Origin: Ramazzottius varieornatus | Lineage: Eukaryota > Animalia > Tardigrada | Reading direction: 5' to 3' | DNA: 64,000 bases | Assembly (NCBI GenBank): GCA_001949185.1 | Contig: BDGG01000002.1 | Span: 8,236,448 to 8,300,447 of the forward strand | Part shown: positions 1-51,900 of the stretch, piece by piece | Layout of the letters: every line of letters begins with the position of its first letter | Position numbering within the stretch: position 1 is the stretch's first letter | Made by a program: the position numbers and the translations under genes | Notes under the pieces: generated by a model | Told to the model about the DNA's origin: nothing | Seen by the model: the letters and a program-made list of their open reading frames with translations, nothing else | Database searches by the model: none

Positions 1-3000
1 ATTCACGCTAAAAGTCCTGTCGAAACCCACAGCGCCGGAGAGTCTAACAGCCACCGAGATCACTTCTCAATCCGTCACGCTAACTTGGACAACACCAACG
101 GAAGATGGTGGCAAGCCGTTGACACACTACACGGTCTACAAACGAGTGACGACAAGAACTGTCTGGCAGAAAGTCACTCGCGTCACATCGACCACCACCT
201 CGGTAACGGTGGAGGAACTACAAGCTAGCACCGCTTACGACTTTTACGTCACAGCCCAGAATGAAATTGGCGAGAGCGAAGGCGCCGAACTCAGCCGCAT
301 CCGAACTGAAGAAGCGAAGAAGCCTGAGAAGGTGGCGCCACGAGGATCCGTTGATAAAGGTGATAGACGTAAGCCATCGTTGGTGCCCGCCGAAGAGAAG
401 GAAACGCTGGTCACACCAACTATTCATCTGAGCAAGAGCAACGTAACAACGACCATCAACCAGCTTGTTCAAATATCGGTTACCTTCTCGGGAGAACCAC
501 GCCCGAAGCTGACGGTGTACCATAACGATGTCCTGATCGACACGGTGGCATCGCGTCATTATCAACTGGACGAACGTCGACATGATATGATGGCCACGTT
601 TAGCATCACAAGAACGGAGCTGAGTGACACCGGAACCTACAAGATCAAAGCTACTAGCCCTGCTGGAGAAACTAGCGCTGAATTTACTCTAAAGGTAAAT
701 AGAAAAATGCCCTTGTTTGAGCCTAAAAAGTAGAAACCAGTCTCCTGCATCATGGCTGACATGCACAGGTTACCATGATTTCTATGTTTTTTTGCAGGTT
801 TTGACCAAAGCCGGCCCTCCAACTCAAGCCTCCGCTACCGACGTTACTACCGCCAGTGCCACCATAAGCTGGCAGCCTCCTACACAAGATGGTGGCTCGC
901 CCATCAAGCAGTACATTATTGAGAAGAAGGTGTCCACTCGCTCAACGTGGATTCGAGTAACGACCACCAAGACCACGGAAGTGACCATTACCGAGCTGAA
1001 CGAAGACACCAGCTACGACTTCCGCATTCGAGCAGAGACGGACTATGGCGAAGGGGAGAATGCCGAGTTGGTGAATGTCAAGACCAAAACTGTGGAGATC
1101 AAGAAGGAAGTGAAGGTAGTCGAGACGAAGAGAGAGCAAGGACCAGCTGCGACGACGCCAACAGTTACCATCAGTAAATCCAGCATCTCAGTGGGAACTA
1201 ATCAGATGATGCAGGTTGATGTCTCGTTTACTGGTCAACCACGACCGCAGTTGACGTGGAGGCATAACGGAGCGGTACTAGAGATGACGCGTCGTGTCAC
1301 CATTGAAGAACGACGAACACAAATGGTGGCCACTTTCACCATTAAGAAGACGGAACAGACTGATGCCGGAACTTACACCGTTACAGCCAAGAATGACCAC
1401 GGTGAGGCTTTGGCTAATCTAACTCTGGTAGTCTTGGATAAAGCTGGACCGCCAAGGAACTTGACCGTCAGAGAAGTGACGCCCAAGACGGCAGGGCTGA
1501 CATGGGAAGCCCCGTTGACCGATGGTGGAGCACCTGTTAAACATTACTTGGTGGAAAAGAGAAGTGCCGGAAGGACCACATGGACCAAGGTGACCACTAC
1601 CCAAGAAATGAAGGCTGTTGTCACCGAGCTTGTGCAAGGAAACAAGTTCGAGTTCCGCGTTAGAGCTGTCACCGACCAGGGCGAAGGAGCAGAAGCGCAA
1701 GTTGGACCTATTACCGCTGACTACACTTTCGGTCAGATAACAGGGAGCTCGGCCAAGAAACTGCGCAAGCTCGTCATCTCCAGTGGCGCAGGCTTTCGGC
1801 TAACAACATTGACAAGCTCGCCACTTGGGATAACAATCTTGTCGAGTTTGTCTGCCGAGCTACCAGTAGCGTTCAATCTTTGACATTTGCGATGTTCGGG
1901 CTCATTTACGCTTTCCCTATTTACAGATGTTCCATCAGCACCGGCAGCTCCTTCAGTCAGCAACGTTACTTCCAAGACTGTAACCTTAACCTGGCTCCCA
2001 CCGTTCAAAGACGGCGGAAGTCCCGTCACCGGCTACCACCTTGAGCAACGGGTCGGCAAGTCTTCCTACTGGCGCAAGATCACCAAGCAAGCCATCACAA
2101 GCACCACCTTCGAAGTGACGGACGTCATCGAAAAAGAGTCGTATGAATTCCGTGTCATCGCTGAGAACCTCAAAGGACCCAGTCAACCTAGTGAACCCAG
2201 CGAGAAAGTGACCATCCCGACAGCCGTCGTCGAGAGCAAGCCACCGCGACCCGATACTACTGGTCGACCCAGCCGTGTCTCGGCCACACCCGTTCGCGAT
2301 CGCCTAGGCCGTGCGCCTTCCGAGATGTCCGGACGAGGATCAAGAGATCGATCAGCACGAGAGGACACCATCGGCTCGGAGGATTTGGAAATGTCCGATG
2401 AAGAAGCGGAGATGCCCGAGTATGAGGAAAATATGAACAAGCCGGCCTTCTTGAGACCCTTGAGCGATACTCGATGTACTGAAGGCGAAATGGTGGCACT
2501 CCGTTGCGAGGTAATTCACCGATGAATCACTAAATAGAATTTTGCTGAAAAAACTCTACAAGATCGTTGTTCCGCATGGCGCGGATCTTCTGACAATAAC
2601 CCAGGCAACGTGCGCCATTTGGGTGAACAATCTCGTTGAGTTTTGTTAGTGGCGCATGCTTTTGGCCAACAACACTTGGAACGTGCGCCGCTTGAAAAAG
2701 CAAACTTGTAAATAATGTGTAGAAATGGGCCTCCTGCCTTGATGAGTTGTTGATCCGGGAATGTTAAAGGTTTTGGGAACGCCAACGCCCACTGCGCTTT
2801 GGTACAAGGATGGCCAAGTCATTAGAGAGAACATGGGATACCAGCACATCGTTCAAGATTCCGTCCACAAGCTGCTCATCAAGGAAGCGTTTGTGGAAGA
2901 TGGCGGCGTGTATAAGATTGTAGCGCAGAACGCCGCGGGCAAAGCCGACTCCAGCTGCACGCTGACTGTCAAACACCGACAACAGCTTGAGGAACGTGGA

Positions 3001-6000
3001 GTCAACAAGCCACCCAAGTTTACTCAGCCCTTGGTCGATAAGATTGTACAGGAAAGAGACCAAATGTACCTGGAAGTCAAAGTGGAATCCTTATCTTTCG
3101 TCAGTTTCCGATGGTACGGCGTTTTTCACTGTGACTCTTAAGGTGTGCTCGAACTGTTACAGAACTTCCTCACAATTTTTTTACAGGAAAAAAGACGGAA
3201 GAGAAATCACAACTGATGAAACCTTCACGATCAAGTCCATCACCAAAACTTCATACCTGATCATTAACAAGTGCTCAACCACCGACAGCGGAAGATATTC
3301 TTGCGTCGCGCAGAATGTCTCAGGAACTGCGGAGACCTCAGCTCAGATTACCGTCCAAGGTAAGAGAATAAAACTAAATGCCGCCACATGACATTACGGG
3401 AAAAAAAATGTTTGTGGTTTAGCTGGAAAGAAAAAGGTGGAACGACAAGCAGCGCCAACCTTTATCCGCGGGCTGGACGACATGACGGTGCGCCACGGCG
3501 ACTCGGCCACGCTGGACTGCGACTTCCGGGCTGAACCAGCTGCCGAAGTCACTTGGTACTTCAACGGTCGCAAGATCAGCCGTTCCAGCAAGTACCGAAT
3601 CTTTTCCGACAGCAACCACAGTCGCTTGACCATAGTTGACACCACTCTGCAAGACAGTGGCGAGTTTACGGTGGACATCCGCAACGTCGCCGGCGTCAAG
3701 AAGTCCTCTTGCAACTTGACGGTCAAGCAGGCGCCATCCGACATTGTGCCGCTAAGGGAAGGCGAAGCCCCGCGGGTTGTCGATCGCTTGACTGACGTGG
3801 AGATCATGGAGGGCTATGACGTGGGCTTGACTTGCAAGATAGTCGGCACACCCACACCGCGCATCCAGTGGCTCTTTGACAAGAAAGTCATCGCCAGCTT
3901 CACCGACCGCATCAAGATGACACAGACCGAACATGGCAAGACCTACATGTTGTCCATCAAGAACGTCACGCCAGCCGATCTGGGCATCTATACCTGTAAG
4001 GCTACTAACGAGTTTGGGGAAGTAACCACATCGGCCTTCTTGAACGTCCTGTCTGGAGAACGACATGTCGAACAGAGGGAAGCAACACTGAATGCACCGC
4101 ATATCACTCGGGGCTTGCGAGATACCGAAGTTATTCGCGGGGAAGATGTTAAACTTGACTGTCGTGTAATGTGTGACTCGGAGTATTTTGTCAACTGGTA
4201 AGTTTTGCCAAACTGGGCAGCTCGTCAACGAGATCCAGATTACAGGTTGCGCATGTTACAATTTCACAGAACAAAATGCGTACGCCACTTGAAAAATAAC
4301 CAAGCTTGAAAATTCTTTTTTCAAGTGGAGCATAGTTTCAGACAGTGATACTGTAACTATGCGCCACTTCGAAGACAGTCTTGTCGAGTTTGTTTACCGA
4401 TTCGTCATCACAAGTATTGGTCGTTAAAAGTTGAGTTATCAAGAAGGTGAACCCGTCCCTTTGTGTAGGTACAAGGATGGTATTGAGTTGGGTTACGAAG
4501 ACCACCGCATCAGCCGCTACCAGCTGCCCAACGGTCGGGTCGTCCTCGAAATCAAGGAAGCCAGCCTACACGACACCGGCTACTACAGCGTCACTGTAAG
4601 GAATGCAGCGGGTAAAGCAACTTCCTCCGCCCAAATGACAGTCGACGCACCGCGCTACTCTTTGGAGCCTCGCCGTAGCGTAGAAGATGTCCGTCTGGAA
4701 GAACGAGCCAAGAGACGCCTCAACCGCGTCCACGCCAACCCACCGGCGCCCATCGCCGAAGCACCCACTGTCTTGAGCTACGAACCCGGAGTTTTCAACA
4801 TTCACTGGCAGCCGGTCTTATCCGAGTTCGAGCCAGAAATACCCACCTACTACGTGGTGGAGATGCGTGACAAGTCCCAGAGTGACTGGACACGAATCCA
4901 GCAAGGTATCACCACACCGCGGGTGATGCTGAATATTGCGCGACCTGGAGAGGATTTCATCTTCCGTGTCCGCGCTGAGAACATTCACGGCACGAGCGAA
5001 CCGTCGCCCATCGCGTTGACCACCCGCGACATGGACATGGAGAGAGCCATCCTCAAAGACCGTATGTCCACTTCGACGGCTCGCCGTCCCCCCGTCCAAG
5101 CCATCCATCCCATCTACATTCCCTACCACGAGCACCTTCGCACTGATTGGAGTACACAGTACGAACACGAAGAGTACAGCGAGGTGCCGAAAGTCCATTT
5201 GAAGAATAACGACATCAACTATGTGCCCGAACACCACCCCGTCATGCTGGAATGCTGGGTGTCGGGATACCCGCCACCGATGGTCAAGTGGCTCTTCAAG
5301 GGTAAGGAGATCACCACGGGAGGACGGTACAGTATCCGGTCGACGCCCAGTGGACACGTCCAGCTTCACATCGACAACATGATGTTGGCTGACAGTGGGG
5401 AATACTTGGTGCTGGCCCAGAACAAGAGCGGCCATCAGGCCTTAGCCATTCGAGTCGAAGTAGCCGATCCACCAGTGTTTATCGAACCGATGGTTGATAC
5501 CGTGGCCCAAACACGCAAGACCATTCGGCTGGACTGTCGTGTCGATGGGACTCCCTTCCCGGAGATTCGCTGGTTGAAGGACTGGGCTGTCGTGGTCGAC
5601 AGTGCCCGCATCAAGATTCAGCACGGTGTCGGTGGGTACACTTCGCTGATCATCAATGATGTCTTGGCTCGAGACGCCGGGTTGTACACTTGTGAAGCCA
5701 AAAATGCGGCGGGCACGGCCTTGTGTACCATAACCATGACGGTGGTACAGAGCAAGGACACGTACACCGACACGGATGTCTATGTGAGGCGGGTAAGACC
5801 GAAACGGAAACGCCTGACGGACTTTTACGACCTCCAGGAAGAAATCATGCGTGGAACACAAGGTAATGCATTTTTGTATTCAAATTTGGTTCAAGACGTC
5901 GCCAAATGATTTATCCAGATCGCTATCTCAAGTGGCGCACATTTCCAATATTGACGGCCGAGAGCGTACGCCACTTGGGAAACTCGACTGCACTGCTTCT

Positions 6001-9000
6001 CTAAGTGGCGTACAGTTGCATTTTATTTGGCTGAGAGTGTGCGTCACTTGGCGAACGGTCCGGATGATTTCTTTGCCGACTTCCTAGTTGATTATTTTGA
6101 ATAAGTGTGCGCGGGTTCACAGGTGTAATCAAGCGAGTGACTGAGAAGGCTTCCGGACGAACCTACGCCGCCAAGATTTCCTTCGCGGAGCAGAAATACT
6201 ACCCCTACCTGGAGAACGAACTGCACATCCTCAACGAGCTGAACCACAAGAACATTATCGGTCTTCATGACGCCTTCGAAGGTGGCAAGTCCATGACGGT
6301 TATCATGGAGTACGCTCGTGGTGGCAACATCCTCAACCGATTGACCACTCGCCAAAGCTACACCGAACGCCAGGTGGCCAACATCATCCGACAAGTCCTC
6401 CAAGCACTAGCCCACATGCACGAGAAGAACATTGCTCACTTGGACATCAAGCCTGAAGACATCCTGCTGGCCAGTGCCGACGACGATCGAGTGAAACTGG
6501 TGGACTTTGGCCTGGCCAAGAAACTCAGCCCAACCGAACGCTATATTTCCGAGTTTGGTACGCCCGAGTTCGTCTCGCCAGAGATTGTTAACAAGTACGC
6601 CGTGACGACTGCTAGCGACCTCTGGAGCGTGGGTACACTGACTTACCTGCTCCTGTCTGGTCGCAACCCCTTCTTGGGCGAGACGGATCGCGATACACTG
6701 CTGAACATCCAGAGCGCCGTCTGGAACTTCGACCACTACTTCGCCAATATCAGCCAGGAAGGCAAGGACTTTATATCGAAGCTGTTGAAGATGAACCCGA
6801 CGGACCGACTAACGGCAACCCAAGCGCTAGACCATCCTTGGTTGGTCGATCGGGCATCGCAAGACGAGGTTGTCATTGACGCCGACAAGCTGCAACAGTA
6901 TCAACGCCATCGTCGCGACAAACTGGTTTCGTCGGCTGTACACAAATATGCGCGGTTCAAGCCACTTCACGCTGCCATCCACCACCCTCAGGTATAGTAA
7001 TTCATTAGCTAATACAGTCCGGTCGCACGAAATCTGGTACCTGATTTTGCGATTTCAAAATAAAGAAATCGTGCAAAATTAACGATACTGCAAGCCATAC
7101 CGACACAGCCGGTCCACATGCGGGTTCATTACTTGATCACACCAGTACAGCTACATGTAATTTCGGCCTTGGCTTGTCGTGCTGTATGGCGAATGTATAG
7201 CAGACTTCAAAACAAAATCGGAGAAATAGGTACCAGATTTCGATCGACCGGGCTGTAATTTAATTTGGTTTTTGTTTTAATTTAGTATTTCTTGCAGGGT
7301 ATTTTGTATCCACCGGAAATTCTGGCCTATGACGAATACGAAGCACGGTTACGATCTCCTTCTCCAGAAGCTGTAACGTGGACAGGAGCTCGCGACCTCA
7401 GCAGTCGTGGAGCCACGCCCTTCGGGGATGATCGAACAGTCAGTTCAGGCGGAAGTGAGCCTTCAGCCTCCGAGTCCAAGTACCAAATGGGTCCGGACTC
7501 GGAGCTCCTCCAGCTCCGCGATCCAGACTTGCCTGTAAGTTCCATGACGCAGTCCGACATCGCAGAAACCGGCGAAGAAATGTCTTGTTTTTAGATTCGT
7601 ATTCGACAATACCGAAGACTGGCGCGTAACCCGCACGGCTACGGTAGCGTCAAGCTGGAGATGGAGCAACGTGCATGGGGATTGAAACCAGCGGTGAAAG
7701 AGCGACGCCGCATGCACGACGTGATGGACGAGGAAGGTGTGACACAAGATTATGCCGCCGAACGCTTCGTAGCCAGGAAGAAGCAGAAGCGTGTCATGGA
7801 GGAAGAAGTTGAGTACTATCCACCAGTCTTCCGAGAGAAGCTGCGCGACATGGCTTTTGCCGAACACAAACCACTGAGCTTGAGGGTGGTGGTCAACGGC
7901 AACCCCACACCCAAGGTGACATGGTACCGCAACGAAGCGCCGTTGGAAAGGAACCCTCGAACCAGCACTCATTACTCGGACAATGGCACCTGCGTCCTCA
8001 ATATCTCACCGGCTGTCTCCAGCGATGCTGGAGAGTATAAGATTGTCGCGCGCAATCGCCTCGGCGGTAAATTGTTCCATACAATATTTGTGGACGCCGG
8101 CAAATGTAACGTGCAAGATCAATATCTCAACCGACGCCACCTCCCGTCGTATTGGCCACTTGGGGTGGAGGTCTGGTCGAGCTCGCAAGTGGTGCACGTT
8201 CTCAGTAACATAAGCTGGAAATATGCGCCACTTGAGACACAATCTTGTGCATTTCGTTTGCCGGCCTTTCATCCCAGTGTAAAACGGCTCTACGAGTGAT
8301 TTTACTTTGCAGAGGTGATCTCGCGTTGCCGAGTTCTTGCCGGTTCGCCGCCTGATCCACCATCATGGCCGACAGTGGAGCAAATCGGAAGCGACCACGC
8401 GCACATTCAGTGGCACTATCCCGTCTTTGATGGTAACAGCGAAGTGTTGGCCTACAGAGTGGAATACCGAAGTCGCAACGACAACAGCTGGAACTTGTAC
8501 AGCGACGAACTGATAGACGAACGCGTCGTGGTTCGCCACCTCCTCCCTGGCACATTCTACCGGTAAGCCATATTAAAGCCATTGAGCCAAGACACACAAT
8601 TTTTGGCGGTTGTCTGACCAATTTATCCTGACAGGTTTCGCGTTTTCGGACGTAACATCTTCGGCTGGAGCGAGGGCAGTTATTCGTCGGAGGAAGTTCG
8701 CACACTCCATCCTCACGACCACGACCTGCCCATGGCTAGTGTTGTGGCTGATCCTAGTGCCATCACCAAACGCAGCGCACTTTTGCAACAGACATCCAGC
8801 ACCACCACGTCCAACAAACTTGCCGATCGCATTCCTGGTAGCTTTGAAAAAGTTTCCGTCTCGCTAACCGACGGCGACCCGGGTGCCTTCTATGACTTCC
8901 AGAAAGAAATCGCCAGGTAAAACATTTTGGAGCCTGTCGTCATAGCGTACAAGCTTGTTATAAGAACTGGCGTATAATTCCAGCCAACAGCAATGGAAGA

Positions 9001-10422
9001 TTGCGCCATTTGAGATAACTTATTTTAAGCGGCGCACGTCTGCGCCGGCACGGATGAGTACGTGCGCCACTGAGGATGACGATCTTGCATGTTTCGTTTG
9101 CCGGCTTTCCTGTCAGTTTTCCATGGCATAATGCGTTAATATGGATTTTGGGTTTTACAGAGGTCAGTTTTCTGTGGTATACAGCGGACTCGATCGCAAG
9201 ACATTCGGCATTGTGGCGGCAAAGTTCATTGATTCGTCCAGCCCCGATGCCTTGAACGAATACGAGACGCTGCGTTCGCTGAAACACGAGCGCATCTCGG
9301 AATTGTACCGCGCATTCCGATTCAAGAACGAGTACATGGTCCTGGTCATGGAGAAGCTGGACAATATGGACATTTTGACATACTTGTGCCAACGAGAACA
9401 GTACTCGGAAGAAGACGTCTCCATAATGATGCGCCAGACGTTAGACGCGCTGCAGTACCTCCACCTGCTGGGCATCGCCCATCTTAACCTCCAACCGGAC
9501 AACATCATCATGGAAACACCATTCAAGACCAGTGTGAAGCTGGTTGATTTCGGATCGGCACGAAGACTGCCGAAAGAGGGCATGATCATTCGCAACTTGA
9601 CCACACCGCTTGACTACAGAGGTACGATTACACAGCTCTTTTACTCTGTATGAAGACGCGGGCAAATGGCTTGAGCCAGGTCGTTGTCTCCAGAAGCGCA
9701 CGCCTTCATTGTTATTGACTGAGCATGTGCGCCGCTTGAGAGGATGGTAGTGCTTAATTCATTACCCCTTTTAATTTTATATTTTAGAATTTTTAGATAC
9801 CAGATAGTGATCATTCAACTGTCATTTGAATTTGTGTATCATTTGCTTCTGTATGTTTGCAGCGCCGGAGATTATCACCAACCGGTTGACCGATGTTCAA
9901 GCCGACATTTGGGGAATGGGCGTTCTCGTCTTTATACTGTAAGTTCGGCACATTACTAAAACCGCAATTGGCTTTTCTTTATGAAGAATGGTATCATTAC
10001 AGGTTGAGTGGATGCTCACCATTCCACGGTGAAGACGACGAAGAGACCACCGACAACGTACGGTTTGTGCGCTATCGGATCGGCGAACTTTATCATGGCC
10101 TAACTACCGAAGCTTCGCGCTTTATCATGCAAACCTTGAAAGCCATTCCCAGGTACGATACTCATAGGAGAAAATTATGATCTCTGAGGTTAACGGCCAT
10201 TTCTTTCATTATAGCAATCGACTGAGTGTGGAAGAGTGTTTGGAGCACCGCTGGATAATTCCTAGCGAACTAGGCGTACTGAAGCGCGAGAAGACAGTCT
10301 TTAACTCACTGCGACTGTCCAACTTCCGCCGAGCCTACTACATGCGGAAGGAAAAGATCACCGGCTTTATTGACACCTTAGTGAAGTTGCCCATCCCAGT
10401 AGCAGAGCCTGAGGAACCCTGA
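1..10422 (+). CDS. unc-89: UNC-89/obscurin-like giant sarcomeric protein (Ig/Fn3 domains plus two C-terminal kinase domains), 5'-partial, multi-exon
   Basis: Exons join in frame across GT-AG introns: <1-694, 798-1731, 1927-2510, 2770-3113, 3187-3359, 3423-4197, 4469-5862, 6123-6991, 7298-7534, 7595-8066, 8313-8562, 8635-8916, 9161-9621, 9863-9938, 10003-10152, 10215-10422 (TGA). Ig motifs (W-x-K-D-G; D-x-G-x-Y-x-C/V-x-A-x-N), Fn3 motifs (W-x-P-P-x-x-D-G-G-S-P; Y-E-F-R-V-x-A-x-N), kinase 1 (GTQGVIK, YAAK, HLDIKPED, DFG, GTPEFVSPE), Ig-Fn3 linker, kinase 2 (RGQFSVV, HLNLQPDN, DFG, APE). Kinase-linker-Ig-Fn3-kinase ending is characteristic of UNC-89/obscurin. Confidence 0.9.
1746..1861. repeat. 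Intronic palindromic element (IPE) 1, single unit
   Basis: In unc-89 intron 1732-1926; AGCTCGGC..CAGTGGCGCA..CGCCACTTGG..GCCGAGCT; core 1783-1824. Confidence 0.85.
2553..2709. repeat. IPE 2, double unit
   Basis: In intron 2511-2769; cores 2576-2618 and 2649-2691. Confidence 0.85.
4216..4400. repeat. IPE 3, double unit
   Basis: In intron 4198-4468; cores 4246-4288 and 4325-4367. Confidence 0.85.
5897..6081. repeat. IPE 4, double unit
   Basis: In intron 5863-6122; cores 5932-5974 and 6005-6047. Confidence 0.88.
7015..7255. mobile_element. MITE family A (Tc1/mariner-type) in an unc-89 intron
   Basis: TIR CAGTCCGGTCG..CGAAATCTGGTACC / GGTACCAGATTTCG..CGACCGGGCTG flanked by TA; related copy at 56619-56875. 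Confidence 0.85.
8096..8265. repeat. IPE 5, double unit (first unit degenerate)
   Basis: In intron 8067-8312; ends GCCGGCAAA/TTTGCCGGC; core 8189-8231. Confidence 0.85.
8945..9116. repeat. IPE 6, double unit
   Basis: In intron 8917-9160; cores 8967-9009 and 9029-9070; right end GACGATCTTG..TTTGCCGGC. Confidence 0.85.
9658..9745. repeat. IPE 7, single degenerate unit
   Basis: In intron 9622-9862; core 9693-9735 (GAAGCGCAC..GTGCGCCGCTTG). Confidence 0.7.
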
Positions 10423-10836: not shown

Positions 10837-10854
10837 ACACACACACACACACAC
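10837..10854. repeat. (AC)n microsatellite between convergent 3' ends
   Basis: ACACACACACACACACAC. Confidence 0.8.
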
Positions 10855-10943
10855 GAGCTAGATTACAAGACGACAAAGCACGGAAAAACGAATAACAGAA
10901 TTTGCGTTATTTTCCCTGATGACTGAAAAAGCGAGGGTAATAG

Positions 10944-13405: not shown

Positions 13406-14106
13406 TACACACACCACTAGATGATCCCACCTGTAAAATGAAGAATCTCGGACAGGTAAAGACTTGAGGATGAGGATCCGAGGACAGGTGCAGGATCTAT
13501 CTCTTCGAAACTGTTCCGCGAAAGAGATCGAACTCGAAATAAACGCGTCATTCAGGCCACGCTGGCACTCCTTGCTGGCTGTGACGTCAGTCTGTCTGAA
13601 TGGGTGCAACTGTACATACGGCAGAGCTTGATTGGACCGAAGAGGAACGTGGGTGGGACCTTCATTGTTCCCCATCCATAGTCTGTTTTTAACGCACACA
13701 TTCATCATGTAAAATATCACGCTTTCTCATGCAACTGAGACGCGTCTTTACATGACAGCCATGCTTTTCAGATTTCAGGGGCCATCGATTCTCTCACGAA
13801 CCTGCGTACGAAACATATTTTGATCAGGTCTACGAAATATCGATTGATTACTCGATGTGTTGAATGCACCCTGGTTCTGCCATCTGACGCATATTTTCGC
13901 GCTGCTGAAGTTTTGTCAGAAATCCGGGTTAAGAATTTAAGATTTGGCGGGATCTCTTCAGCCGAGAACGACTAGTCCCAGTGTTCACGTCGTGGTCCAT
14001 ATCAAAAGGAGAGCAACGTTCGCCCAAGCGGTTCTCTCGGTTTAGTTGTAGGCAGTAAACGAGCCATAGAATTTCATCTAAACTAATGTTCCCTTCGAGC
14101 AGAGCC

Positions 14107-42590: not shown

Positions 42591-42792
42591 TCTTAGCCAT
42601 CTATGGTAGATACTTCATGATGGGACATACAGTAATAGAGTCTTTCTAACACCAAACCAGTCTACTTTGTTGTCTGTTCGTCGACACAGATTACCAAGCG
42701 TATCGACGGACAGTCAACAAAGTATACGGATTTTGGTGTTAGAAAGCCTCTGTTATGACCCATCATGAAGTATGTAACATAGATGGCTAAGA
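42591..42792. repeat. Palindromic MITE-like element
   Basis: TCTTAGCCATCTATG..ATACTTCATGATGGG..CTTTCTAACACCAAA mirrored by TTTGGTGTTAGAAAG..CCCATCATGAAGTAT..CATAGATGGCTAAGA. Confidence 0.75.
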
Positions 42793-43214: not shown

Positions 43215-45736
43215 CTAAAGGTCGAAACTAGCTCGTTTAGTTTGACTGACATCTTGGGTGCTGCCACTGAAGCCCGTATCGGAATGTTTTCTTTTGTTTC
43301 TGAAAGAGCAACAACACAAACAGCCAGCGCAGCCCTTCTTAGCTTTTTGGCGTGTCCGCAGCGTGGCTTGGTTATAAGGCGGCTTGATCCTAGAATCAAA
43401 GACATCCCCGACACCGTTCATCGGGTCTGCTCGATCACTGCGGACGTTGCGCGATGAAGCCGCCCCCGCGTTTTTCGACTTCCGACCACCACCTGCCTCC
43501 ATTGTCTGTCCGTCGTACCTTCTAGCCAGCTCTATTCTCGTCTGAAATCAAGCAACATGCCCGTAAGGATTCATGGTCAGATCACAGCACCGAAGTCACC
43601 TAGCTCCGTTTAGCTCGTAAGCCAACAGTGATCTGCCATTTTTCTACAGGAATGGCCAACAAAGGCGTGCAGGACACGGCCCTGGTCGAGACTTTTGTGT
43701 ACCTGTCGTAAACAAAACGGCCAAACGGTTCATCTGAAGTGGCACACGTTCTTACTGTTGCTGGGAGACAAAGTGCGCCACTTGGGAAATCAACTGGGTG
43801 AATTTACTTTTCGACGTCTCGAATGAGCTGAACGAGTTACGCGCGCTCGTGTGTACCTGTAGGTCTTCTGGCAGGGGTCCTAAGCTGCCTAACAGCTTGT
43901 TCCGCGTTTTCCAAAAATCAGCTACCCTTTCTCCATGAAAATCATAGACATGATCGAAGGTGGCTTTCTCCCTGGCTATCATATCATGGAAGAGCTGCCG
44001 GCAAAAGTTATAGTCGGGTTTCTCTTCGTATTCCAGCGTCCTGGAGTACTTCATGAACTTGCAGAACTCCACCGGCGCACCCTTACACACGTCCTCAACG
44101 CCCAGCTTGAGCTTCTTCTCCAATATCCTTTTGCACTTCTCGGCGAACGTCGAACCAGGCAAGCCTTGCCAAGGAAGGTGGCCAATGTGCAGATACAGAA
44201 AAAGGTAGGACAGAGCTTCCAAATCATCGCGACGACCTACAGCAATGGAGCAGTTCATGAAAGGAAGCGAGGATAATATCCTATTCTTTCTGACCTTGTT
44301 CATGATGCTGCAAAGCGTTGATAGACATATAGCGTGGAGTGCCCACTGAGCCCTTCTTGGTGTTGAAAGGGACATGTTGTCGAGAAACCGGGTTAATGTA
44401 CTCTTTCGACAAGCCAAAGTCGACGATGAAGACCGTGTTGGCGTTCGGCCCATCTCTCCTTCCCAACAAGAAATTCTCCGACTTAATATCCCGATACAAT
44501 ATACCTGTCAAGACAGAGATGGTTCGACATGAGGAGTACGGAGTATAGCATGGACGTGGATCAGTACCTTTAGAGTGGATGTATTCCATCCGATCCAGCA
44601 GCTGAATAGCCAGCATGCAGGTCGTCTTGACAGCGAACTTGCCACCACAGGCTTGTAGGAGGTCTTCGATATTGGGACCGAGAAGCTCCATGATAAGCAA
44701 TTGGTAGTGGTGTCCGGTGGAGCACTCACCGAAATAGTAAATGATGGGTATGCCGGGCTGGGCAGGTGCCACGCCCACATTGACACCACCACCCAAGACC
44801 TGATAGAACTTACGCTCGCGATGGAGCTGCGGGTACGACGAGTCCATGCGTTCGGCCTTGATGGCCACAGGCTCCAGCGTGTGGATGTGCCTGCCGATGA
44901 ACAGAGTTCCAAAGGAGCCTGCAGCAATGCGCCGTTCGATGAGCCAGTTTTTGCCCGCCATCGTTCCCACTAGGATCTCGCCGTCCTCCCTTTCCCGCGC
45001 ACCCGACTTGCTGTCTCGTCGAGCATCCGCCAGCGCCTTAGCTTGCGCTGGAGATGAGCTTGCTTTTGGAGGAGGGTTTGTAAGATCGGTAGGTTTCTTC
45101 TGTCGCGTGCCGGGTTCATCCTTCGCGGGCTCGGGCCGCGCCTCCTGATTTTCCTTCTGCAGGTCGGCAGGTAGCTCTTTTGCCTTCTGAGAACTATTTT
45201 TGGGCATGGATGGCGGTTTACTGGACTTGAAAGTGGAGACTTCTGGTGACGGCACGGATACAGCCAAATGGCCTAACGCGAGAAAAAATGAAGGTGAAAA
45301 ATAGAGATAAATTTCAAACATTTCCAAAATCACAGGCAAGCCGAGCGTACGAATAGTATTCAGTCGTCATCGTAAGTGACGCGCTTTTGCATTATCATCG
45401 GCTGAACGCCTGCGTCACTTGAAATGACGATCTTGTACGTTTACTTTGCCGGCCTCTCATATGCTAGGATTAATCGCAGTTGGGTCAGGTGTTACGGTTA
45501 CCTCTGTCATGTTGACCGTTTACAGGGGTAGAGTTGGTCAGAGGCGCAACGGCAGGTAGAGGCGAAGGAATAGGCGGTTGGGAGGCCACACTGCCTGTCC
45601 GATCAGTAATGTCGGACCTCACCTCTTCCGGCTCCGAACCGAGATCAAGGGATTGCAAATGAGAGTTTTCAGTGCTGAATTTAGACTTCTTATTTGTTGC
45701 GAGAAATAACTGATTGGGGGACTCCACCATCGTCAT
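43215..45736 (-). CDS. CSNK1G: Casein kinase I gamma (gilgamesh)-like kinase with long N-terminal extension
   Basis: Exons approx 45736-45502, 45272-44568, 44504-44295, 44236-43857, 43541-43215. IAAGSFG, VAIKAE, PQLHRE, MELLGPNIEDL, YRDIKSENFL, DFGLSK, GTPRYMSIN, RRDDLEAL, LPWQGL. Terminal exon has CLCCCSFRNKRK, the CK1-gamma type Cys palmitoylation tail. Confidence 0.85.
43718..43818. repeat. IPE 14, single unit
   Basis: In last CK1-gamma intron; core 43739-43781. Confidence 0.85.
45339..45454. repeat. IPE 15, single unit
   Basis: In CK1-gamma intron 45273-45501; TCGTCAT..AAGTGACGC..GCGTCACTT..ATGACGA; core 45376-45418. Confidence 0.88.
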
Positions 45737-45988: not shown

Positions 45989-48106
45989 TCAGACTCTTGC
46001 AGCGCTGAACACTTTCAGCGCACTGTCAGCTCCACCGCTGAGCAGAAGGTTCCTGTCGGACCAGCTACAGCATAGGATCTTGTCAGAATGCCCAGCCATG
46101 TCGTATAGTGGAGCTTTCGGACTGCAAGAAAACACCCCGTCATGATATCCAGCTTCCTGGAAATTCACTGAGCGATGTGGCCAGAGACCCAGAAAACCAC
46201 AAGGAGGAGTTAGTTTACCTTCTTGCGTCCCACATCTTCATGACTTTGTCGTACGATCCGCTGATGAAGAGGTGGTCGTTATTCGGGCTCCACGCGACTG
46301 ACGACACCCATCCCGAGTGCGAGAGAAAGCCGAGCTTCACCACGGATCCTTCTGCAAAAGCACGCGAAGTCTCATCACAAGTTTCTTCGAAATTCCATGT
46401 GGCGAATACTTCCGGCCAACATCACTAGAGACGTGCGCCATCTGGGATAGCAAAAAAAACCAACTCGACCAGATCTTTTCCCCAAGTAGCGCACGTTCTC
46501 GGTTGTATTAGCTGAAATTGTGCGCCACTTGGAAAAATAATCTGGTCGAACGTCTACGCGGAGTTCCAATATGAATCTCTGTGACAGAGTTTGCTTACCA
46601 TGGGAACGAGGGTCGTACAGTCTTATAAGGCGATCAGAAGATCCGCTAATTACTGTGCGATTCAAGGAAGAGTAGGACAAGGAAGTGAAGGCTTTGGAGC
46701 TGTCCAGCTGTCGGCTGACGCCGCCCAACTCCACGTCCCATATGCGGATGGAATGGTCCCAGCTACCCGTGATGATCTCAGTCTTTCCTGTCCAGGCACA
46801 ACACGAGACGGCTTCCTTGTGTCCTGGCAACGTCATCTCCGGCGTCTACGATACACCAGCGGATGAATGAATACGGATGAATGAACATTGCCGGCAGTGA
46901 CTGCGACAAACGGGACCTCGGTAAGCATACTCAACTCTCGTTTTTCCTACGTTACGCATTATTCAGCCAAAAACACTGAGGAATGCGATACCTTCGTCAG
47001 ATTCTTCCTGTTCTCGCCCTTGAACTTCTTATCGGCAGGTGCGGCAATTTCTTCTGTAGCGTCGTCCTCCAGCGACCATATCTTCAACGTCTTGTCCCAA
47101 GAAACCGAACAGAACTACCAGGAGAAAGCGCAGGCTTGGCTTGTGTTGAATTTCTTGAATATTTAGCGAAAAATACCTTCTTTCTGTCTGGACTGAGGGA
47201 TAGGGCGTCAACGCTGTTTGCATGTCCCCGGAAGAAGGCTCTGGGCGATACGTTCTTCCCTCCTTCGTCGATATTCCACAGAGCCACTGTCTGGTCATGG
47301 GAGGCGGTTAGGAAAGAGGAAGAAGTTGTCCAGCAGACGCCCTTGATGGGCGCTGTGTGCGCGGCGTGGCTGAGGACCAACTGTCCATCGCGGGAGTTCC
47401 ATACCCGCACCGAGTTATCGTAGGCACCCGTCAGGATGTAATCGTCAAAGGAATGAACAGCTGAGACCCAGTCTCGATGCTCCAAAGAACGGTCAGGCTC
47501 AGGTGCTGGCGCACGCTCGATATATTCAATGGAAATCACATTTTCCTACAAAGAAATCAAGTGAGCAGATCAATGGAAATCAATCAAGCACAGCCGGTAC
47601 ACAATCAGATGAACTGACGCATGACGTTAACGAATATTCGAAAAACACACGTAATTGATCATTCCAAATCTCATGACGCCGTGAAGCAAATCGGTAGTAA
47701 AAGACTCCTATTTTCCTCAAGATTTCCTGCAAATTTCGAGACCAAATCACTCACGGAAGAAATTTGTTGCTGTTGAACATATTCTCCGACGGACGTAAGG
47801 AGAATATCCCCGTTGATGAGGAAGTCAAAGTCGACAGGAATCCAGTTTTCGACAGCGCTTTCTGCAAAATAGAGTCGATCAGCTGGACAGCCTAAACACA
47901 CCATTCGCGAAACAACTGAATATTCATGTATTCTCAGAGTAATTACCTCCAAGAAGCTGATTGACCAACAGGTTAAGGTCTGAAGAGGCTGTGGTAGTGG
48001 GGATGGAGTAAGGAATATCGGTGACTGCGAAGCGAGGAGACTTCGTGTGTAGTCGGATCTGGAGGTACGAATCCTGCGGCTCCATCGTGCCTTCTCCCTC
48101 ATCCAT
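45989..48106 (-). CDS. WDR12: Ribosome biogenesis protein WDR12/Ytm1 (NLE/UBL domain plus WD40 repeats)
   Basis: N-terminal [38 protein letters not shown]; [20 protein letters not shown]; WD repeats ([63 protein letters not shown]); stop TGA at 45989-45991. Confidence 0.92.
46370..46566. repeat. IPE 16, double unit
   Basis: In WDR12 intron 46352-46598; cores 46399-46441 and 46486-46528. Confidence 0.88.
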
Positions 48107-48306: not shown

Positions 48307-48379
48307 GCCGAAATAGCTCAGTTGGGAGAGCGTTAGACTGAAGATCTAAAGGTCCCGTGTTCAATCCACGGTTTCGGCA
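48307..48379 (+). tRNA. tRNA-Phe (GAA)
   Basis: GCCGAAATAGCTCAGTTGGGAGAGCGTTAGACTGAAGATCTAAAGGTCCCGTGTTCAATCCACGGTTTCGGCA: 73-nt cloverleaf, anticodon GAA, followed by a T-run Pol III terminator. Confidence 0.97.
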
Positions 48380-48914
48380 CTTCTTTTTCGCTGGTTTTTT
48401 CTTCTTTCTTGCAATGTACTGTGTTCCGATGTGGTATGACTAGGTTATCTGCTAAAAGCTTCCATCGGCAGCGTGTCGCTCGAAGCGTCAGTTTCTAAAG
48501 TGAGAAAGGGAATTAAGGGAGGTTATCGTGTATTCTGGCATTTTTCCCAGTAATACGGTCGTCATCGACCGCTGTAGACCATTACACTGCGAAATGCACA
48601 AGAGCTCCGATAATTTATTTCTGACATGCGCAGGACGGCAGATGACATCTGTAAAGTGTAAACAGCATAGATAAAACGAGAATAATCGAGGAAATTAAAA
48701 CGATGCAATAGTGAATAGACACGCTGGAAAACTGCCAGACAGCTTCGATCAAAACAAGCAAACCAGGAAGGACTCGTCGACTCACGAACGTCATGGAATG
48801 AAAATAATTAGCTAATACTCCAGAAGCAGATTCGTTGTCACCGAGATTAAATGTATAGATCGTGGAACAGAGAGCGTAACACGTCCAGAAAGAAATATCA
48901 TTGAATGTATTAAA

Positions 48915-51900
48915 TCAGTTTTTCGATTGGTAATGTTGAGCCAGGATATTCCAGGCCGACTGGCCCATAAAACCCGCTGGCGGCGTCACGCCATCACGGG
49001 CGAACTGCCGCATCTTGGTCCCGGAGATATTGTTAAATTCATCTTTGCGTTGAGCATCAAAGAACTCCATCCGTTGGTTCTTGGTGTTGTAGGAGGCTTC
49101 TCGGAAGGGAATGATTTCCAGGTTCTGCAGACCCGGCGCCATGGTCAACACCTGGATGAGACCATTTCAGTATCGCAGTCGACACACCCATTCTTTACTT
49201 TAATTTGATTTTATGAATTCACTGATGCTCTTGGGACTTCGGCAAATGATCATTTTCTTAGATCACTTAGATCATTTTCTCAAGTGATGCACGCTCTCCA
49301 CCAGTTAAAATGTGCGCCAATCGAGAAGACAACCTCAAAAATTTTCAAAGTGGCGCACTCTCTAAGCCAACAACAACACAAAGGTGCGCCACGTGAAGTA
49401 ACGATCTGGGAGAAGGTTTTTGCCGACGTACTATTTATCATTTTTTACTTCATTCTTTCACTTTACTTTGTTTCATTTCATGTGTGAGAAGTGTTACCTT
49501 TGAGCCATGGGTAGCCACGTAGAGATCCTTCTTGGTTGCCGGGTGCGGCATGCCAGCAGGATCTCGGCCGACAATGTAAAAGTTGGCACCGGTCGCCATG
49601 CGAGCTTTGGCGTGCCACTGCACTTCCGTGGGACCAGCGTAGAGCATTGGCGACGGGAAGATAGACAGCACCGTCGACTTGGGGTCGAGAATACCCTCGT
49701 CCAGGACGGCATGATGCTGTCGCATGCGGACATCTAGTGGCACGTCGTCGTCTTTCGTCCATCCACCTGCAGACAAATCATAGTTTAATTAACCTGATAC
49801 AAACATTACTCAACTGCCAGCGGCGTTGGTCATAGTAAGACTGATCATTCGCCTCCAGCGCCTTCGCAACACGTTCTAGATCCCATCGGGATATTACCCT
49901 GCTTAACGACACTTTCTCACAATAAAAATTGGAGAGAAGGATTAAACCTTCTGATTCCTGCGAACAGAATTTACTGTTGAAACCTGTACATCAATGAAAA
50001 GATATTTGGGAATTCAGAATACTTGCTGGATACGCTTAAAATTTCAGCTCACTGAGCAGCTGAATATTCAAACAGTTTACGAAACATTTAAGTTACCCAG
50101 AGGATGGAGAAGGAGTGTGGGATTCTTGTAGCCGCGACCCAGTAGTTGTCGCCGAGTGTCTTGCATCAGCAATGCGTGGCCGTTGTGGATGGGGTTCCGT
50201 AATTGGAAGGCAAAAATCGCGTCGGCCTGCAACCGCAGAAAAACGTTGACACCGAAAACTCAACCTAGGAAAGAAAGAAAGGAAGGAGATGCACTGCAGA
50301 AAGAGTTACCCCGAGAGTATGGAATTTCTTTCGGAGCTCGTTGGGTGTCAGACGATATTCGTCCAACCCATCGTTCCAGCGAATTCTCTCCAGAACATCC
50401 AGCTCACCACCGACTAGCCAATCCCCACTCTCCATGATCATCTGCGAAACCTCAAGTTCTTTTTTGTTCTAACTTCTAGACAGGACACTTTGGTAATTTC
50501 TGGTGAAGTAACACAAGGTTGCTTCTGCAAGTGGTGCACACTGCCAGTTGACAACACTCGAAACGCGCGCCACTTGGGAAAACACCTAAATTCGCCAAGA
50601 TCGCTTCCTCAAGTGGCGCAGGCTTGCAGCAACCCCACTGAGTACGTGCGCGACTTGAAAGACAATCTTGTCGACTTTGTTTGCCCACCTCCCGTATTAT
50701 TGAACATGAACCTTAATGTAAGGATGGCCATCGTTAGTTGTGCCAAAGGTCCTAGCACACCGCTCTTCCTTCCTGTGCTCGTAAAACTCCGGACACCGTA
50801 AAATAGCCACTGGTTTCTGATTGTACGTCAAAGCGATGGCTTGCTGATCCTTCAGCCGTTCCTTGTCCTCTGTACTAACAGCGAGCACGATAGGGATGGA
50901 CTGGTTGATTGCTCGTCCATTCAGTAAGCTACAACGACGAAAGGCTCGTTAACGGCCGAACCGGAAGTCGGTCCGAGAAAGTCCCACCTGTTGAAATGTT
51001 GCGACTGTAGAAAGACGTCTTCGCGCATGAAGCCAGCCAACGGTGCAGCCCATCCTTCAGCCAGCACCTGGACCCACTGGAGATCGACCGTGTTGATGGA
51101 TAATGCGGGCAGTGAAGCAGCTTCCTGCGTGGCCGCCGCTTGGTAGGCCGCGGGGACGAAGAGCTCCTTGACGACGTCGACTGTGTGGGCTGTCACGATC
51201 TCCCGTTCCTCCAGCAGGCGCACCAGCTGCTCCACCGAAGCCTCAATGTTATAGTCGGCTGTACGGACGTCCAGGTCGGGAGTGAGCGGAGGCTCGTAAA
51301 CCGAATCGACACCCGTAAAATCTACCGGAAGTAAACTATTATCAGACTTTATATCGATAATAAAATATGGAGTGTTACAGGTCGATCCGAGTATACCTTT
51401 GATAAGGCCTTTGCGAGCTTTGAGGTAGAGTCCCTTGACGTCACGCTGTTCGCAGACAGATAAGGGAGCGTCGACAAAGATCTCCAGGAATGTCAGACCG
51501 TCCTTCTCGTGCACTCTCCGCGCGTTGTCACGATCCTAAAAGGAAATTCAACTGTGCCTCGATGAGAGTATTTGAGAGCGTTCTACGAACGTACTTTGGT
51601 GTAGGGACTAATGAAGGAAGTGATGCAAATGAGACCAGCATCAGCCATCAGCCTGGCCACTTCCGCCACTCGTCGAATATTCTCCTCACGATCCTCTTGC
51701 GTAAAGCCCAGGTTTTTGTTCAGACCATGGCGGATGTTGTCACCGTCCAAGACGTAGGCCGGAATACCGCGATTGCATAAGTAGTCCTCTAGGGCAAAGG
51801 CTAACGTCGACTTCCCCGCACCCGAATATCCTACAGACAAAAAATTGTAGTATTCGCGTTAAACCATTACACGCGATATAAAATCGACCATACATACTCG

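What the first reader, a model, noticed from the sequence alone, without database searches (positions are those of the whole stretch)
1746..50690. Dispersed family of intron-restricted palindromic elements (CAAGTGGCGCAC-N25-GTGCGCCACTTG) in every host gene of the window
Seen: 18 elements, about 30 units, each in a different intron of all seven protein-coding host genes (unc-89 x7, CREB3-like x1, helicase x3, coiled-coil x2, CK1-gamma x2, WDR12 x1, PAPSS x2). Consensus layout: GCCGGCAAA..CTCGACCAGATCG....YCAAGTGGCGCAC-[25 nt]-GTGCGCCACTTGR....CGATCTGGTCGAG..TTTGCCGGC, as one unit (~115 bp) or two (~170-195 bp). In three introns checked, removing the element leaves 75-79 nt (195-116, 246-170, 260-185), the size of ordinary short introns here, so the elements sit inside otherwise normal introns. 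Copies are highly diverged except in the core arms, and I see no consistent target-site duplication. Inference: this does not look like a neutrally decaying MITE. It suggests a selected, gene-body-wide cis-element, perhaps MITE-derived, such as a site for a dimeric chromatin/insulator or kinetochore-related protein, or a structural hairpin. I do not recognise it as a described element.
Basis: partly seen in the sequence, partly recalled or inferred. Interest (0 to 1): 0.92.

Follow-up and report, generated by a model that had tools for sequence, protein, structure and literature searches.

The report
Ancient palindromic MITE in tardigrade introns
The repeated hairpin motif belongs to a very old, very abundant mini-transposon of about 125 bp that sits mostly in short introns of the tardigrade Ramazzottius varieornatus; it is an ordinary kind of element, except that two inverted 10-11-bp boxes inside it have decayed about three times more slowly than the rest.

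Summary
The window holds 19 elements with 31 hairpin units, all inside gene territory. Genome-wide there are roughly 12,000-18,000 units, about 3% of the genome.

The organism is the tardigrade Ramazzottius varieornatus, not a nematode.

The element is a palindromic, non-coding MITE of about 123-125 bp, or about 190-205 bp with a tandemly duplicated unit. It has long terminal inverted repeats.

- Copies are old, about 32% diverged, and star-like, with no young copies.
- Hairpin pairing is no better than chance pairing of arms from different copies, and orientation relative to the host gene is random. A selected RNA or DNA structure is therefore not supported.
- The fixed 25-nt spacer is explained by a low indel rate.
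- Splice sites lie outside the elements at variable distances, so these are not introners.
- The two boxes (AAGTGGCGCA and its inverse) are only 7-12% diverged, for all four bases and independently of each other. This points to a constraint on the sequence itself, whose cause is unresolved.

Two earlier agents of this scan reached the same reading on other pieces of this genome. No published description was found.

The parts
1736..1872 (.).
   Evidence: nhmmer E=2e-28; arms found; coding segments on both sides
2523..2710. Two-unit element (cores 2573-2621 and 2646-2694), same gene; modelled intron 2511-2769 or 2511-2808
4212..4401 (.). Two-unit element (cores 4243-4291 and 4322-4370) in intron 4198-4435
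5892..6100 (.). Two-unit element (cores 5929-5977 and 6002-6050) in intron 5863-6122
8081..8272 (.). Element with one degenerate unit (8081-8184) and one good unit (core 8186-8234); intron starts at 8067
8921..9121 (.). Two-unit element (cores 8964-9012 and 9026-9073); intron starts at 8917
9654..9754 (.). Single-unit element with eroded outer arms (core 9690-9738)
   Evidence: fold z only -0.1
11256..11474 (.). Two-unit element (cores 11298-11346 and 11378-11426) between - strand coding segments
16111..16243 (.). Single-unit element (core 16154-16201), + strand gene
18066..18269 (.). Two-unit element (cores 18107-18155 and 18180-18226); the + strand coding segment two introns downstream (19094-19360) matches helicase domain AAA_12
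19412..19606 (.). Two-unit element (cores 19428-19476 and 19500-19548), directly downstream of the AAA_12 helicase-domain segment 19094-19360
21176..21398 (.). Two-unit element (cores 21223-21270 and 21304-21352) just before the large open segment 21354-22724
22771..22896 (.). Well-kept single-unit element (core 22812-22860), a good exemplar; modelled intron about 22702-22945
   Evidence: RNA fold z -7.0
43710..43825 (.). Single-unit element (core 43736-43784) in the 306-nt intron 43548-43853 of the CK1-like gene RvY_06163 (- strand)
   Evidence: exon map of the annotated protein
45339..45475 (.). Single-unit element (core 45373-45421), 130-270 nt upstream of the annotated start codon of RvY_06163; either a 5'-UTR intron or a promoter-proximal site, unresolved
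46392..46576 (.). Two-unit element (cores 46396-44 and 46483-531); its two loops point in opposite directions
46900..46982 (.).
   Evidence: nhmmer E=1e-5
49230..49446 (.).
50513..50704 (.). Two-unit element (cores 50528-50576 and 50610-50657), same - strand run of coding segments (APS-kinase match at 51005-51529)

Best explanation
The elements are dead copies of one ancient, non-autonomous, cut-and-paste-type DNA transposon (a palindromic MITE) of Ramazzottius varieornatus.

Structure (shown). One copy is a palindrome of about 123-125 bp. It has an outer inverted repeat of about 32 nt that starts with GGGAGCTCGGCAAAC, then a short linker, then a 49-nt core made of a 12-nt arm, a 25-nt spacer and the inverted arm. 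A common variant carries a tandem duplicate of the core with part of the left arm.

Insertion (shown weakly). It entered at A-W-W-T sites and duplicated 2-4 nt.

History (shown). It spread in essentially one old burst and has since sat still. Copies are about 32% diverged from the consensus. They are no closer to each other than chance predicts, and the two units of one element are no more alike than random pairs.

Location (enrichment shown, causes inferred). The copies survive mainly in short introns. Exon insertions are lost. Intergenic DNA in this compact genome turns over and now holds younger transposons. There may also have been an insertion preference for transcribed genes.

Hairpin (shown). 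The hairpin is inherited from the palindromic design and is not maintained by selection.

The boxes (slower decay shown, cause inferred). The one non-neutral feature is the pair of inverted boxes AAGTGGCGCA / TGCGCCACTT. They change about 3 times more slowly than the rest, at all four bases and independently of each other. I read them as protein-recognition sites, originally those of the element's transposase. Their slow decay is a sequence-level constraint acting on copies where they sit. Its agent is not identified: it could be a host or domesticated DNA-binding protein, or an RNA-binding or splicing factor.
For: Abundance:
- 449 units have both 12-mers exact, against 0 for the reversed control.
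- 2,338 units have exact 8+8 cores, against 0.
- There are 5,283 exact 12-mers, against 6.
- Scaling these counts by the sample's per-position identities gives about 11,000-18,000 units. The product of the sample identities (0.168) matches the genome-derived 0.170.

MITE features:
- Long inverted repeats with defined ends.
- Elements are too short (about 125-205 bp) to encode a protein.
- TSD-like direct flanks: p = 0.007 for 4 nt, p = 0.012 for the inner dinucleotide. Inner dinucleotides were identical in 8 cases and reverse-complementary in 4.
- Some subfamily structure in the outer arms: within-element complementarity 0.663 against 0.598 shuffled, z = 5.5.

Age and inactivity:
- Only 13 exact copies of a 23-nt outer-arm consensus exist in the genome.
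- Divergence outside the boxes is 32-33%.

Star-like history:
- Box mismatches do not correlate with loop or flank divergence (rho -0.01 and 0.05).
- There are no sibling pairs, and adjacent units are 0.494 identical against 0.500 for all pairs.

No selection on structure. Orientation relative to the host strand is 32:36.

Location:
- All 19 window elements lie in the roughly 35 kb of gene territory and none in the other 29 kb.
- 59 of 75 elements are flanked on both sides by same-strand coding segments, against 45% of random non-coding points.
- Published spans are 22.2% intron and 42.8% intergenic (PMC5531438).

Boxes: (copies chosen by outer arm alone still have boxes 87% identical).
Against: - No autonomous partner and no empty site were found, so the transposon superfamily is unknown.
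- The TSD signal is weak: only 2 of 28 elements have perfect 4-nt repeats.
- The outermost nucleotides are not specially conserved (0.51-0.88). That is unusual if the ends were needed for repeated mobilisation.
- A 3-fold slower decay at about 30,000 boxes is hard to ascribe to selection on each copy. The sequenced strain is, to my knowledge, parthenogenetic (the species is among the asexual animals analysed in PMC7953838), which makes such selection weaker still.
- Intron enrichment was measured with my own crude coding-potential model on about 200 kb, not with the genome's annotation.
Confidence: 0.8

Rival explanations
1. One reading: an exapted host cis-element. The paired boxes, 37 bp apart centre to centre, would be binding sites for a dimeric host DNA-binding protein. 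That protein might be a domesticated transposase, an insulator or architectural factor, or a condensin/cohesin loader. Purifying selection would keep the boxes in thousands of gene bodies.
For: - In a star-like, uniformly old family the boxes are 7.5-12% diverged against 32-33% next to them. The factor is about the same for A, C, G and T.
- The box CpG is the best-kept position (0.92-0.95), while CpGs outside the boxes decay like other sites.
- Units with perfect boxes are no younger than the others.
- The two boxes behave independently, as separate half-sites would.
- The 12-mer is essentially never found outside the elements in the window.
- Repeated mobilisation of box-intact copies would give sibling structure, and none is seen.
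Against: - There is no cross-species, population or binding evidence.
- About 30,000 boxes would need to be under selection in a lineage that is, to my knowledge, parthenogenetic.
- Box conservation is the same in clearly intronic copies and in other copies (3.13 against 2.83 mismatches of 24, p = 0.46).
- No known factor is matched convincingly. From memory, the resemblance to the GTGGCGC half of the CTCF motif fails at a key G.
Confidence: 0.3
2. A mutational or repair cold spot. The GC-rich 12-bp stem would be protected from damage, or corrected against its partner arm when the palindrome extrudes as a hairpin. The boxes would then decay slowly without having any function.
For: - The boxes form the most stable part of the predicted hairpin. 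Elements fold with z of -3 to -7.
- This reading needs no selection at 30,000 sites.
Against: - Protection is equal for A, T, C and G. That does not fit GC-biased mismatch repair or protection from cytosine deamination.
- Pairing between the boxes of one unit does not exceed pairing between boxes of different units (0.764 against 0.766). Partner-templated correction therefore leaves no trace.
- The AT-rich stem extension nearer the loop and the outer arms, which pair in the same hairpin, are not protected.
Confidence: 0.1
3. A structured intronic RNA, or a hairpin selected to keep the effective intron length short for splicing.
For: - The elements lie in transcribed introns and fold stably.
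- Because the element is a palindrome, both boxes appear in the pre-mRNA whichever way the element points.
Against: - No covariation: 70.5% paired against 70.1% shuffled, 121 against 126 cells with a change on both sides.
- Loop orientation is random relative to the host strand (32:36).
- No Rfam family matches.
- About 30% of stem pairs are already broken.
Confidence: 0.05
4. An introner: a transposon that creates new introns when it inserts into exons. That would explain the restriction to introns.
For: - Nearly every copy is in an intron, one per intron.
- By my estimate about one intron in seven carries a copy.
Against: - Splice sites lie outside the element, about 4-180 nt from its ends.
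- The flanks share no sequence beyond the 4-nt repeat.
- The intron residue after removing the element is a complete ordinary intron or longer.
- Orientation is random, whereas introners carry directional splice signals.
Confidence: 0.05

Closest known systems
Palindromic / foldback MITEs of animals and plants, such as the Stowaway- and Tourist-type elements and the palindromic MITEs common in Caenorhabditis introns (named from my own knowledge, not tested here)
   Same: Short, non-coding and high in copy number. Long terminal inverted repeats give a hairpin. Short AT-rich target duplication. Located in genes. Decays after a burst.
   Different: The best-kept part is an internal pair of boxes, not the termini. 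No partner transposase is known. The concentration in minimal introns is unusually strong. The terminal sequence (GGGAG...) and the A-W-W-T flanks match no superfamily that I can name with confidence.
Introner elements (Micromonas, Aureococcus, fungi, dinoflagellates; from my own knowledge)
   Same: A transposon family found almost only in introns and making up a sizeable share of them.
   Different: Introners supply or co-opt splice sites at fixed positions and are directional. Here the splice sites are outside the element at variable distances and orientation is random.
Bacterial REP/BIME and Correia/NEMIS elements (from my own knowledge)
   Same: Dispersed small palindromes whose conserved core is a protein-recognition site rather than just a stem. 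They occur as single or tandem units.
   Different: Those elements are prokaryotic, lie between genes and are mobilised by Y1/RAYT-type enzymes without a TSD. No relationship is implied. The bacterial hits to the box pattern are unrelated hairpins at what is apparently one orthologous locus, probably terminators.
Transposon families that spread transcription-factor sites, such as the mouse B2 SINE carrying CTCF sites and the conserved MIR core (from my own knowledge)
   Same: One internal motif of a dispersed repeat is kept better than the rest of the element, which suggests protein binding at thousands of copies.
   Different: Those are retroelements with demonstrated binding. Here binding is untested. 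The similarity of the box to the GTGGCGC half of the CTCF motif is partial and recalled from memory.

Membership tests
MITE (non-autonomous cut-and-paste DNA transposon) | Terminal inverted repeats with defined ends | tested here: met
   The inverted repeat runs from GGGAG to CTCCC. Complementarity stops there in 28 of 29 copies.
MITE (non-autonomous cut-and-paste DNA transposon) | Target-site duplication flanking the repeat | tested here: inconclusive
   Direct 4-nt A-W-W-T flanks exceed permuted pairs (p = 0.007) and the inner dinucleotide is identical 8 times (p = 0.012). Only 2 of 28 are perfect, and no empty site was available.
MITE (non-autonomous cut-and-paste DNA transposon) | Small, non-coding, dispersed and high in copy number | tested here: met
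   Elements are 110-205 bp. There are 5,283 exact boxes spread evenly over the contigs, implying about 12,000-18,000 units.
MITE (non-autonomous cut-and-paste DNA transposon) | An autonomous element with the same ends that encodes a transposase | not tested
   The pogo-like element in the window (54441-56203) has different ends, TACTGTAC....
Introner | Element ends at fixed distance from, or providing, the splice sites; directional | tested here: not met
   Distances are variable, the intron residues are ordinary, and orientation is random.
Introner | Host intron absent at the orthologous position in relatives | not testable with these tools
Structured RNA family / selected hairpin | Compensatory base changes beyond what column composition gives | tested here: not met
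   70.5% paired against 70.1% shuffled; covariation score 0.160 against 0.160; boxes 0.793 against 0.791.
Structured RNA family / selected hairpin | Consistent strand relative to transcription; match to a curated family | tested here: not met
   Orientation is 32:36. Rfam finds only a tRNA in the window.
Helitron/Helentron-derived element | Asymmetric ends, insertion between fixed nucleotides without duplication, 3' hairpin | tested here: not met
   The element is symmetric end to end. The T-T flanks seen at first disappeared when copies were oriented by their loop.
Host protein-binding cis-element (insulator-type) | Sequence kept by selection where it sits; occupancy by a protein; conservation at orthologous sites | tested here: inconclusive
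   Decay at the boxes is 3-fold slower in a star-like family. Occupancy and orthology are not testable with these tools.

The most novel reading that the evidence does not exclude
The paired boxes could be living binding sites. After an ancient burst, a sequence-specific protein, possibly a domesticated form of the element's own transposase, would still recognise AAGTGGCGCA half-sites 37 bp apart in about 10,000 introns. Selection would keep them, which would make this a gene-body-wide chromatin or co-transcriptional signal particular to tardigrades.
Probability: 0.25. Interest if true: 0.8.

Novelty: new variant of a known kind. Interest (0 to 1): 0.5.

Why it matters
By my estimate this one family makes up about 3% of a famously compact genome and sits in roughly one intron in seven. 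It therefore explains much of the long tail of intron lengths in R. varieornatus, and it should be masked or modelled in any annotation or comparative study of tardigrade genes.

The protected boxes give a clean natural experiment. About 30,000 copies of the same 10-nt motif, all of about the same age, each sit beside neutral controls. If the protection is selection, it marks an unknown DNA- or RNA-binding system acting in thousands of genes. If it is not selection, it is an unusually clear case of local variation in mutation rate.

Most of the rest of the finding is ordinary transposon biology.

Tried and rejected
TOOLS THAT WERE NOT AVAILABLE.
Genome-wide figures therefore rest on pattern counts plus about 200 kb of sequence in hand.

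SEARCHES OUTSIDE THIS GENOME. The box pattern was scanned against metagenomes, viral contigs and prokaryotic genomes.
- Metagenomes gave three contigs. These carry unrelated perfect hairpins at what is apparently one orthologous bacterial locus, probably terminators.
- The viral contigs gave none.
- The prokaryotic genomes gave one Caldilineaceae MAG, which I did not inspect.

IDEAS REJECTED.
- Nematode origin.
- Introner.
- Selected hairpin or RNA.
- Helentron-like T|T insertion. This was an artefact of how I first oriented the copies.
- Spacer-length constraint.
- CpG-driven decay as the cause of the contrast. CpGs outside the boxes decay like other G/C sites.
- GC-biased repair.
- Repeated mobilisation of box-intact copies as the cause of box conservation. 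It is disfavoured by the star-like history but not excluded.
- Ascertainment bias. Copies chosen on an outer arm alone still have boxes 87% identical. The product of the sample identities predicts the genome-wide frequency of exact boxes.

OTHER NOTES.
- My splice-site heuristics are noisy. I used them only for clear cases.
- Only single exons were searched, by reference.

Full report
WHAT IS THERE

The 12-mer CAAGTGGCGCAC, allowing one mismatch, occurs 29 times in the window against 0.24 expected. I built an HMM of the whole element by iteration on the window plus 45 fetched loci. It adds a degenerate unit at 8081-8184 and a degenerate element at 46900-46982. It finds nothing in 26-43 kb or 51.9-64 kb. 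Rfam finds only a tRNA in the window.

WHOSE GENOME

The long open exon at 44284-45207 (- strand) is 99% identical to the protein RvY_06163 of Ramazzottius varieornatus. The genome size (55.84 Mb in 200 contigs) matches the published assembly (PMC5531438). The host is therefore a tardigrade, not a nematode.

ANATOMY

Aligning copies gives one palindrome of about 123-125 bp, built as follows:
- an outer arm of about 32 nt starting with GGGAGCTCGGCAAAC and ending with CCAGATCG;
- a T-rich linker;
- a 12-nt arm, a 25-nt spacer and the inverted 12-nt arm;
- the mirror image of the linker and outer arm.

Window 22771-22896 and L027:1408-1532 are good exemplars.

The spacer is itself a weak stem (TTTCAG / CTGAAA) around an asymmetric loop of about 9 nt (CCAATAACA). 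This asymmetry lets each unit be oriented.

About 30% of elements carry two units, and one at a contig end carries five. The second unit comes with a copy of the inner part of the left arm, so it is a tandem duplication.

Complementarity ends at GGGAG/CTCCC in all but one copy.

TRANSPOSON HALLMARKS

The four nucleotides on either side of GGGAG...CTCCC have the consensus A-W-W-T. They are direct repeats more often than chance: 55 of 112 positions match against 43.4 for permuted partners (p = 0.007). The inner dinucleotide is identical in 8 cases (p = 0.012) and reverse-complementary in only 4. Matches such as AGAT/CGAT and GCAT/GTAT show that this is a duplication and not part of the palindrome. 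This fits a 2-4-nt target-site duplication. It is weak, as expected for old copies, and I had no empty site to confirm it.

The left and right outer arms of one element share variants more than arms of different elements do (0.663 against 0.598, z = 5.5). Several source variants therefore existed.

I found no autonomous partner. The pogo-like transposon in the window (DDE_1 domain; 54441-56203) has different ends.

ABUNDANCE

| Pattern counted in the genome | Count | Reversed control |
|---|---|---|
| Units with both 12-mers exact | 449 | 0 |
| Units with exact 8+8 cores | 2,338 | 0 |
| Exact 12-mers | 5,283 | 6 |
| Exact copies of a 23-nt outer-arm consensus | 13 | 0 |

From 2qN = 5,283 and q²N = 449, q is 0.170 and N is about 15,500 units. 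The product of the per-position identities in my sample is 0.168, so the sample is representative. Other scalings give 11,000-18,000 units.

That corresponds to roughly 10,000 elements and about 1.6 Mb. This is about 3% of the genome, or about 13% of the published 12.4 Mb intron span. With about 70,000 introns (13,917 genes × 5.02 introns; PMC5531438), about one intron in seven would carry a copy. These last figures are my inference.

WHERE THE COPIES SIT

My coding-potential map places all 19 window elements between coding segments, within the roughly 35 kb of gene territory. None lies in the other 29 kb. Under uniformity this has probability of about 1e-5.

Mapping the annotated protein shows that element 43710-43825 lies in a 306-nt intron. 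Element 45339-45475 lies upstream of the annotated start codon. Plausible splice sites surround it, but I had no RNA evidence.

Across the window and the loci, 59 of 75 elements are flanked on both sides by same-strand coding segments. The figure for random non-coding points in the same DNA is 45%. This is a lower bound, because a known intronic copy was scored as one-sided.

The published genome is 22% intron and 43% intergenic. The enrichment in introns is therefore real, but 'restricted to introns' is too strong.

Ordinary short introns are 58-73 nt. Element-bearing introns are 240-350 nt, with splice sites 4-180 nt outside the element ends. The elements therefore entered existing introns and did not create them.

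The element-free stretches of the window hold young transposons with perfect inverted repeats. I infer that old copies survive where deletions are dangerous and are lost where DNA turns over. An insertion bias toward transcribed genes is also possible.

IS THE HAIRPIN SELECTED? NO

I aligned 121 oriented units (alignment A1) and counted the 27-pair stem.
- 70.5% of cells are standard pairs, against 70.1 ± 0.4% when the 3' halves are dealt out among copies.
- The covariation score is 0.160 against 0.160.
- Cells with a change on both sides number 121 against 126.
- For the box pairs alone the figures are 0.793 against 0.791. Without the units that had been selected for perfect boxes they are 0.764 against 0.766.

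The arms therefore decay independently from a palindromic ancestor. The copies still fold (z of -3 to -7 for most) only because about 70% of the pairs survive. Loop orientation relative to the inferred host strand is 32:36.

IS THE FIXED SPACER SELECTED? NOT NEEDED

101 of 121 units are 49 nt long and 18 are 48 nt. The family-wide ratio is 0.040 indel events per substitution. A 25-nt spacer at 31% divergence then expects about 0.3 events, which means about 73% should have no indel.

THE ONE ANOMALY: THE BOXES

In 79 units that were not the targets of any pattern search, positions AAGTGGCGCA are 85-95% identical to the consensus. The flanking, spacer and outer-arm positions are 36-88% identical.

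Divergence by consensus base, on the 104 units of alignment A1 left after dropping the 17 picked for perfect boxes:

| Base | Boxes | Outside the boxes |
|---|---|---|
| A | 11.1% | 32.0% |
| C | 10.4% | 32.4% |
| G | 7.5% | 33.5% |
| T | 12.3% | 32.1% |

This is not ascertainment bias. Copies chosen only by a near-perfect outer arm have boxes 83-90% identical and the opposite arm 71%. Copies found by both outer arms alone have boxes 87% identical. The box-mismatch distribution peaks at 1-2 of 20, far from my cut-off.

It is not an age effect either.
- Box mismatches do not correlate with spacer or flank divergence (rho -0.01 and 0.05). Units with perfect boxes have spacers 32% diverged.
- Pairwise identity outside the boxes is 0.50 ± 0.086, against a column-shuffle sd of 0.073, with no sibling pairs.
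- The two units of one element are no more alike than random pairs (0.494).

In such a star-like family, a filter acting only during transposition should leave sibling groups that share most of their non-box changes. None is seen. The slower decay therefore seems to act on copies where they sit.

Equal protection of all four bases argues against GC-biased repair and against protection from deamination. The independence of the two boxes argues against partner-templated correction and against selection for pairing.

What remains is a constraint on the sequence itself, which is the signature of a recognition site. Its agent is unknown. The number of sites (about 30,000) and, to my knowledge, the parthenogenetic reproduction of the sequenced strain make copy-by-copy selection surprising.

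I therefore put about 0.3 on a host-level function. I leave the cause open within the main explanation.

ASSEMBLY GAPS

The gaps at 28604-28653 and 36326-36375 are in the transposon-rich, gene-poor stretch. They are at least 5.7 kb from any element. No open frame of the host genes crosses them, and their flanks share no 12-mer. Continuity could not be tested without reads. The gaps do not affect the elements. They do mean that 'no copy in 26-43 kb' holds only for the letters that were read.

KNOWN OR NEW

Searches of the paper library found nothing on this family. I searched for the motif, for R. varieornatus with introns, inverted repeats, MITE, hairpin and palindromic, and for introners in tardigrades. 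Dfam and Repbase could not be queried.

Two earlier agents of this scan reached the same reading on other pieces of this genome: an old palindromic MITE with protected boxes (s1-789700 and s1-789703). I reached mine before reading theirs. New here, as far as their short summaries show, are:
- the duplication signal at the flanks;
- the star-like history;
- the base-independent protection of the boxes;
- the independence of the two boxes;
- the explanation of the spacer by the indel rate;
- the case against an introner.

VERDICT

This is a real, very abundant, apparently undescribed MITE family. It is ordinary in kind. Its unusual features are its concentration in minimal introns and a pair of internal boxes under an unexplained sequence constraint.

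LIMITS

No reads, no related genomes and no further genome sequence were available. I searched single exons only, by reference, and built no joined model.

Noticed in passing
window 48307-48380 (+): A tRNA-Phe (GAA) gene (Rfam 70.5 bits; also found by ARAGORN). It lies on the + strand among - strand coding segments, about 1.3 kb from the nearest element.
   Followed up: partly
window 54441-56203: A pogo-type transposon that looks intact. It has perfect 31-nt terminal inverted repeats (TACTGTACTCCC...) around an open frame of about 316 aa with a DDE_1 domain (E = 1e-22). It is young, unlike the palindromic family.
   Followed up: partly
window 56617-56877 and 56202-56341: Two small elements with inverted repeats starting TACAGT / TACTGT (43 nt at 100% and 33 nt at 88%). 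They look like young Tc1/mariner- or pogo-type MITEs. They sit in the stretch that lacks the old family.
   Followed up: no
window 40147-40725 (+): An open frame with a partial DDE_1/DDE_3 transposase match (E = 1e-9) in the gene-poor stretch between the two assembly gaps and the CK1-like gene.
   Followed up: no
window 42591-42792: A nested set of three inverted-repeat pairs (39, 34 and 24 nt; 82-92% complementary) forming a foldback of about 200 bp that is unrelated to the family studied.
   Followed up: no
window 28484-28675: A stretch of about 22 nt starting 120 nt left of gap 28604-28653 is nearly the reverse complement of the first 22 nt after the gap. The gap may sit inside an inverted repeat, which could be why assembly broke there.
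   Followed up: no
L001:1387-1768 (G000 contig 1, first 2 kb): Five units of the family in tandem with a period of about 82 nt at the very start of the contig. This is the only array longer than two units that I saw.
   Followed up: no
L035:1469-1639: One copy whose palindrome continues perfectly for 23 more nt beyond both ends (AT-rich). It is either a variant with longer arms or an insertion into another palindrome.
   Followed up: no
window 44284-45207 (-): The long open exon of the CK1-like gene reads through a short in-frame intron of about 60 nt without a stop. The annotated protein matches at 96% over this stretch because of it.
   Followed up: partly
L046-L048 (metagenome contigs); L049 (Caldilineaceae MAG) not inspected: In the three metagenome contigs, the box pattern AAGTGGCGCAC...GTGCGCCACTT occurs by coincidence in a perfect hairpin of about 45 nt, probably a terminator, at what is apparently one orthologous bacterial locus. 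It is unrelated to the tardigrade element. The single prokaryote-genome hit (L049) was not read.
   Followed up: partly
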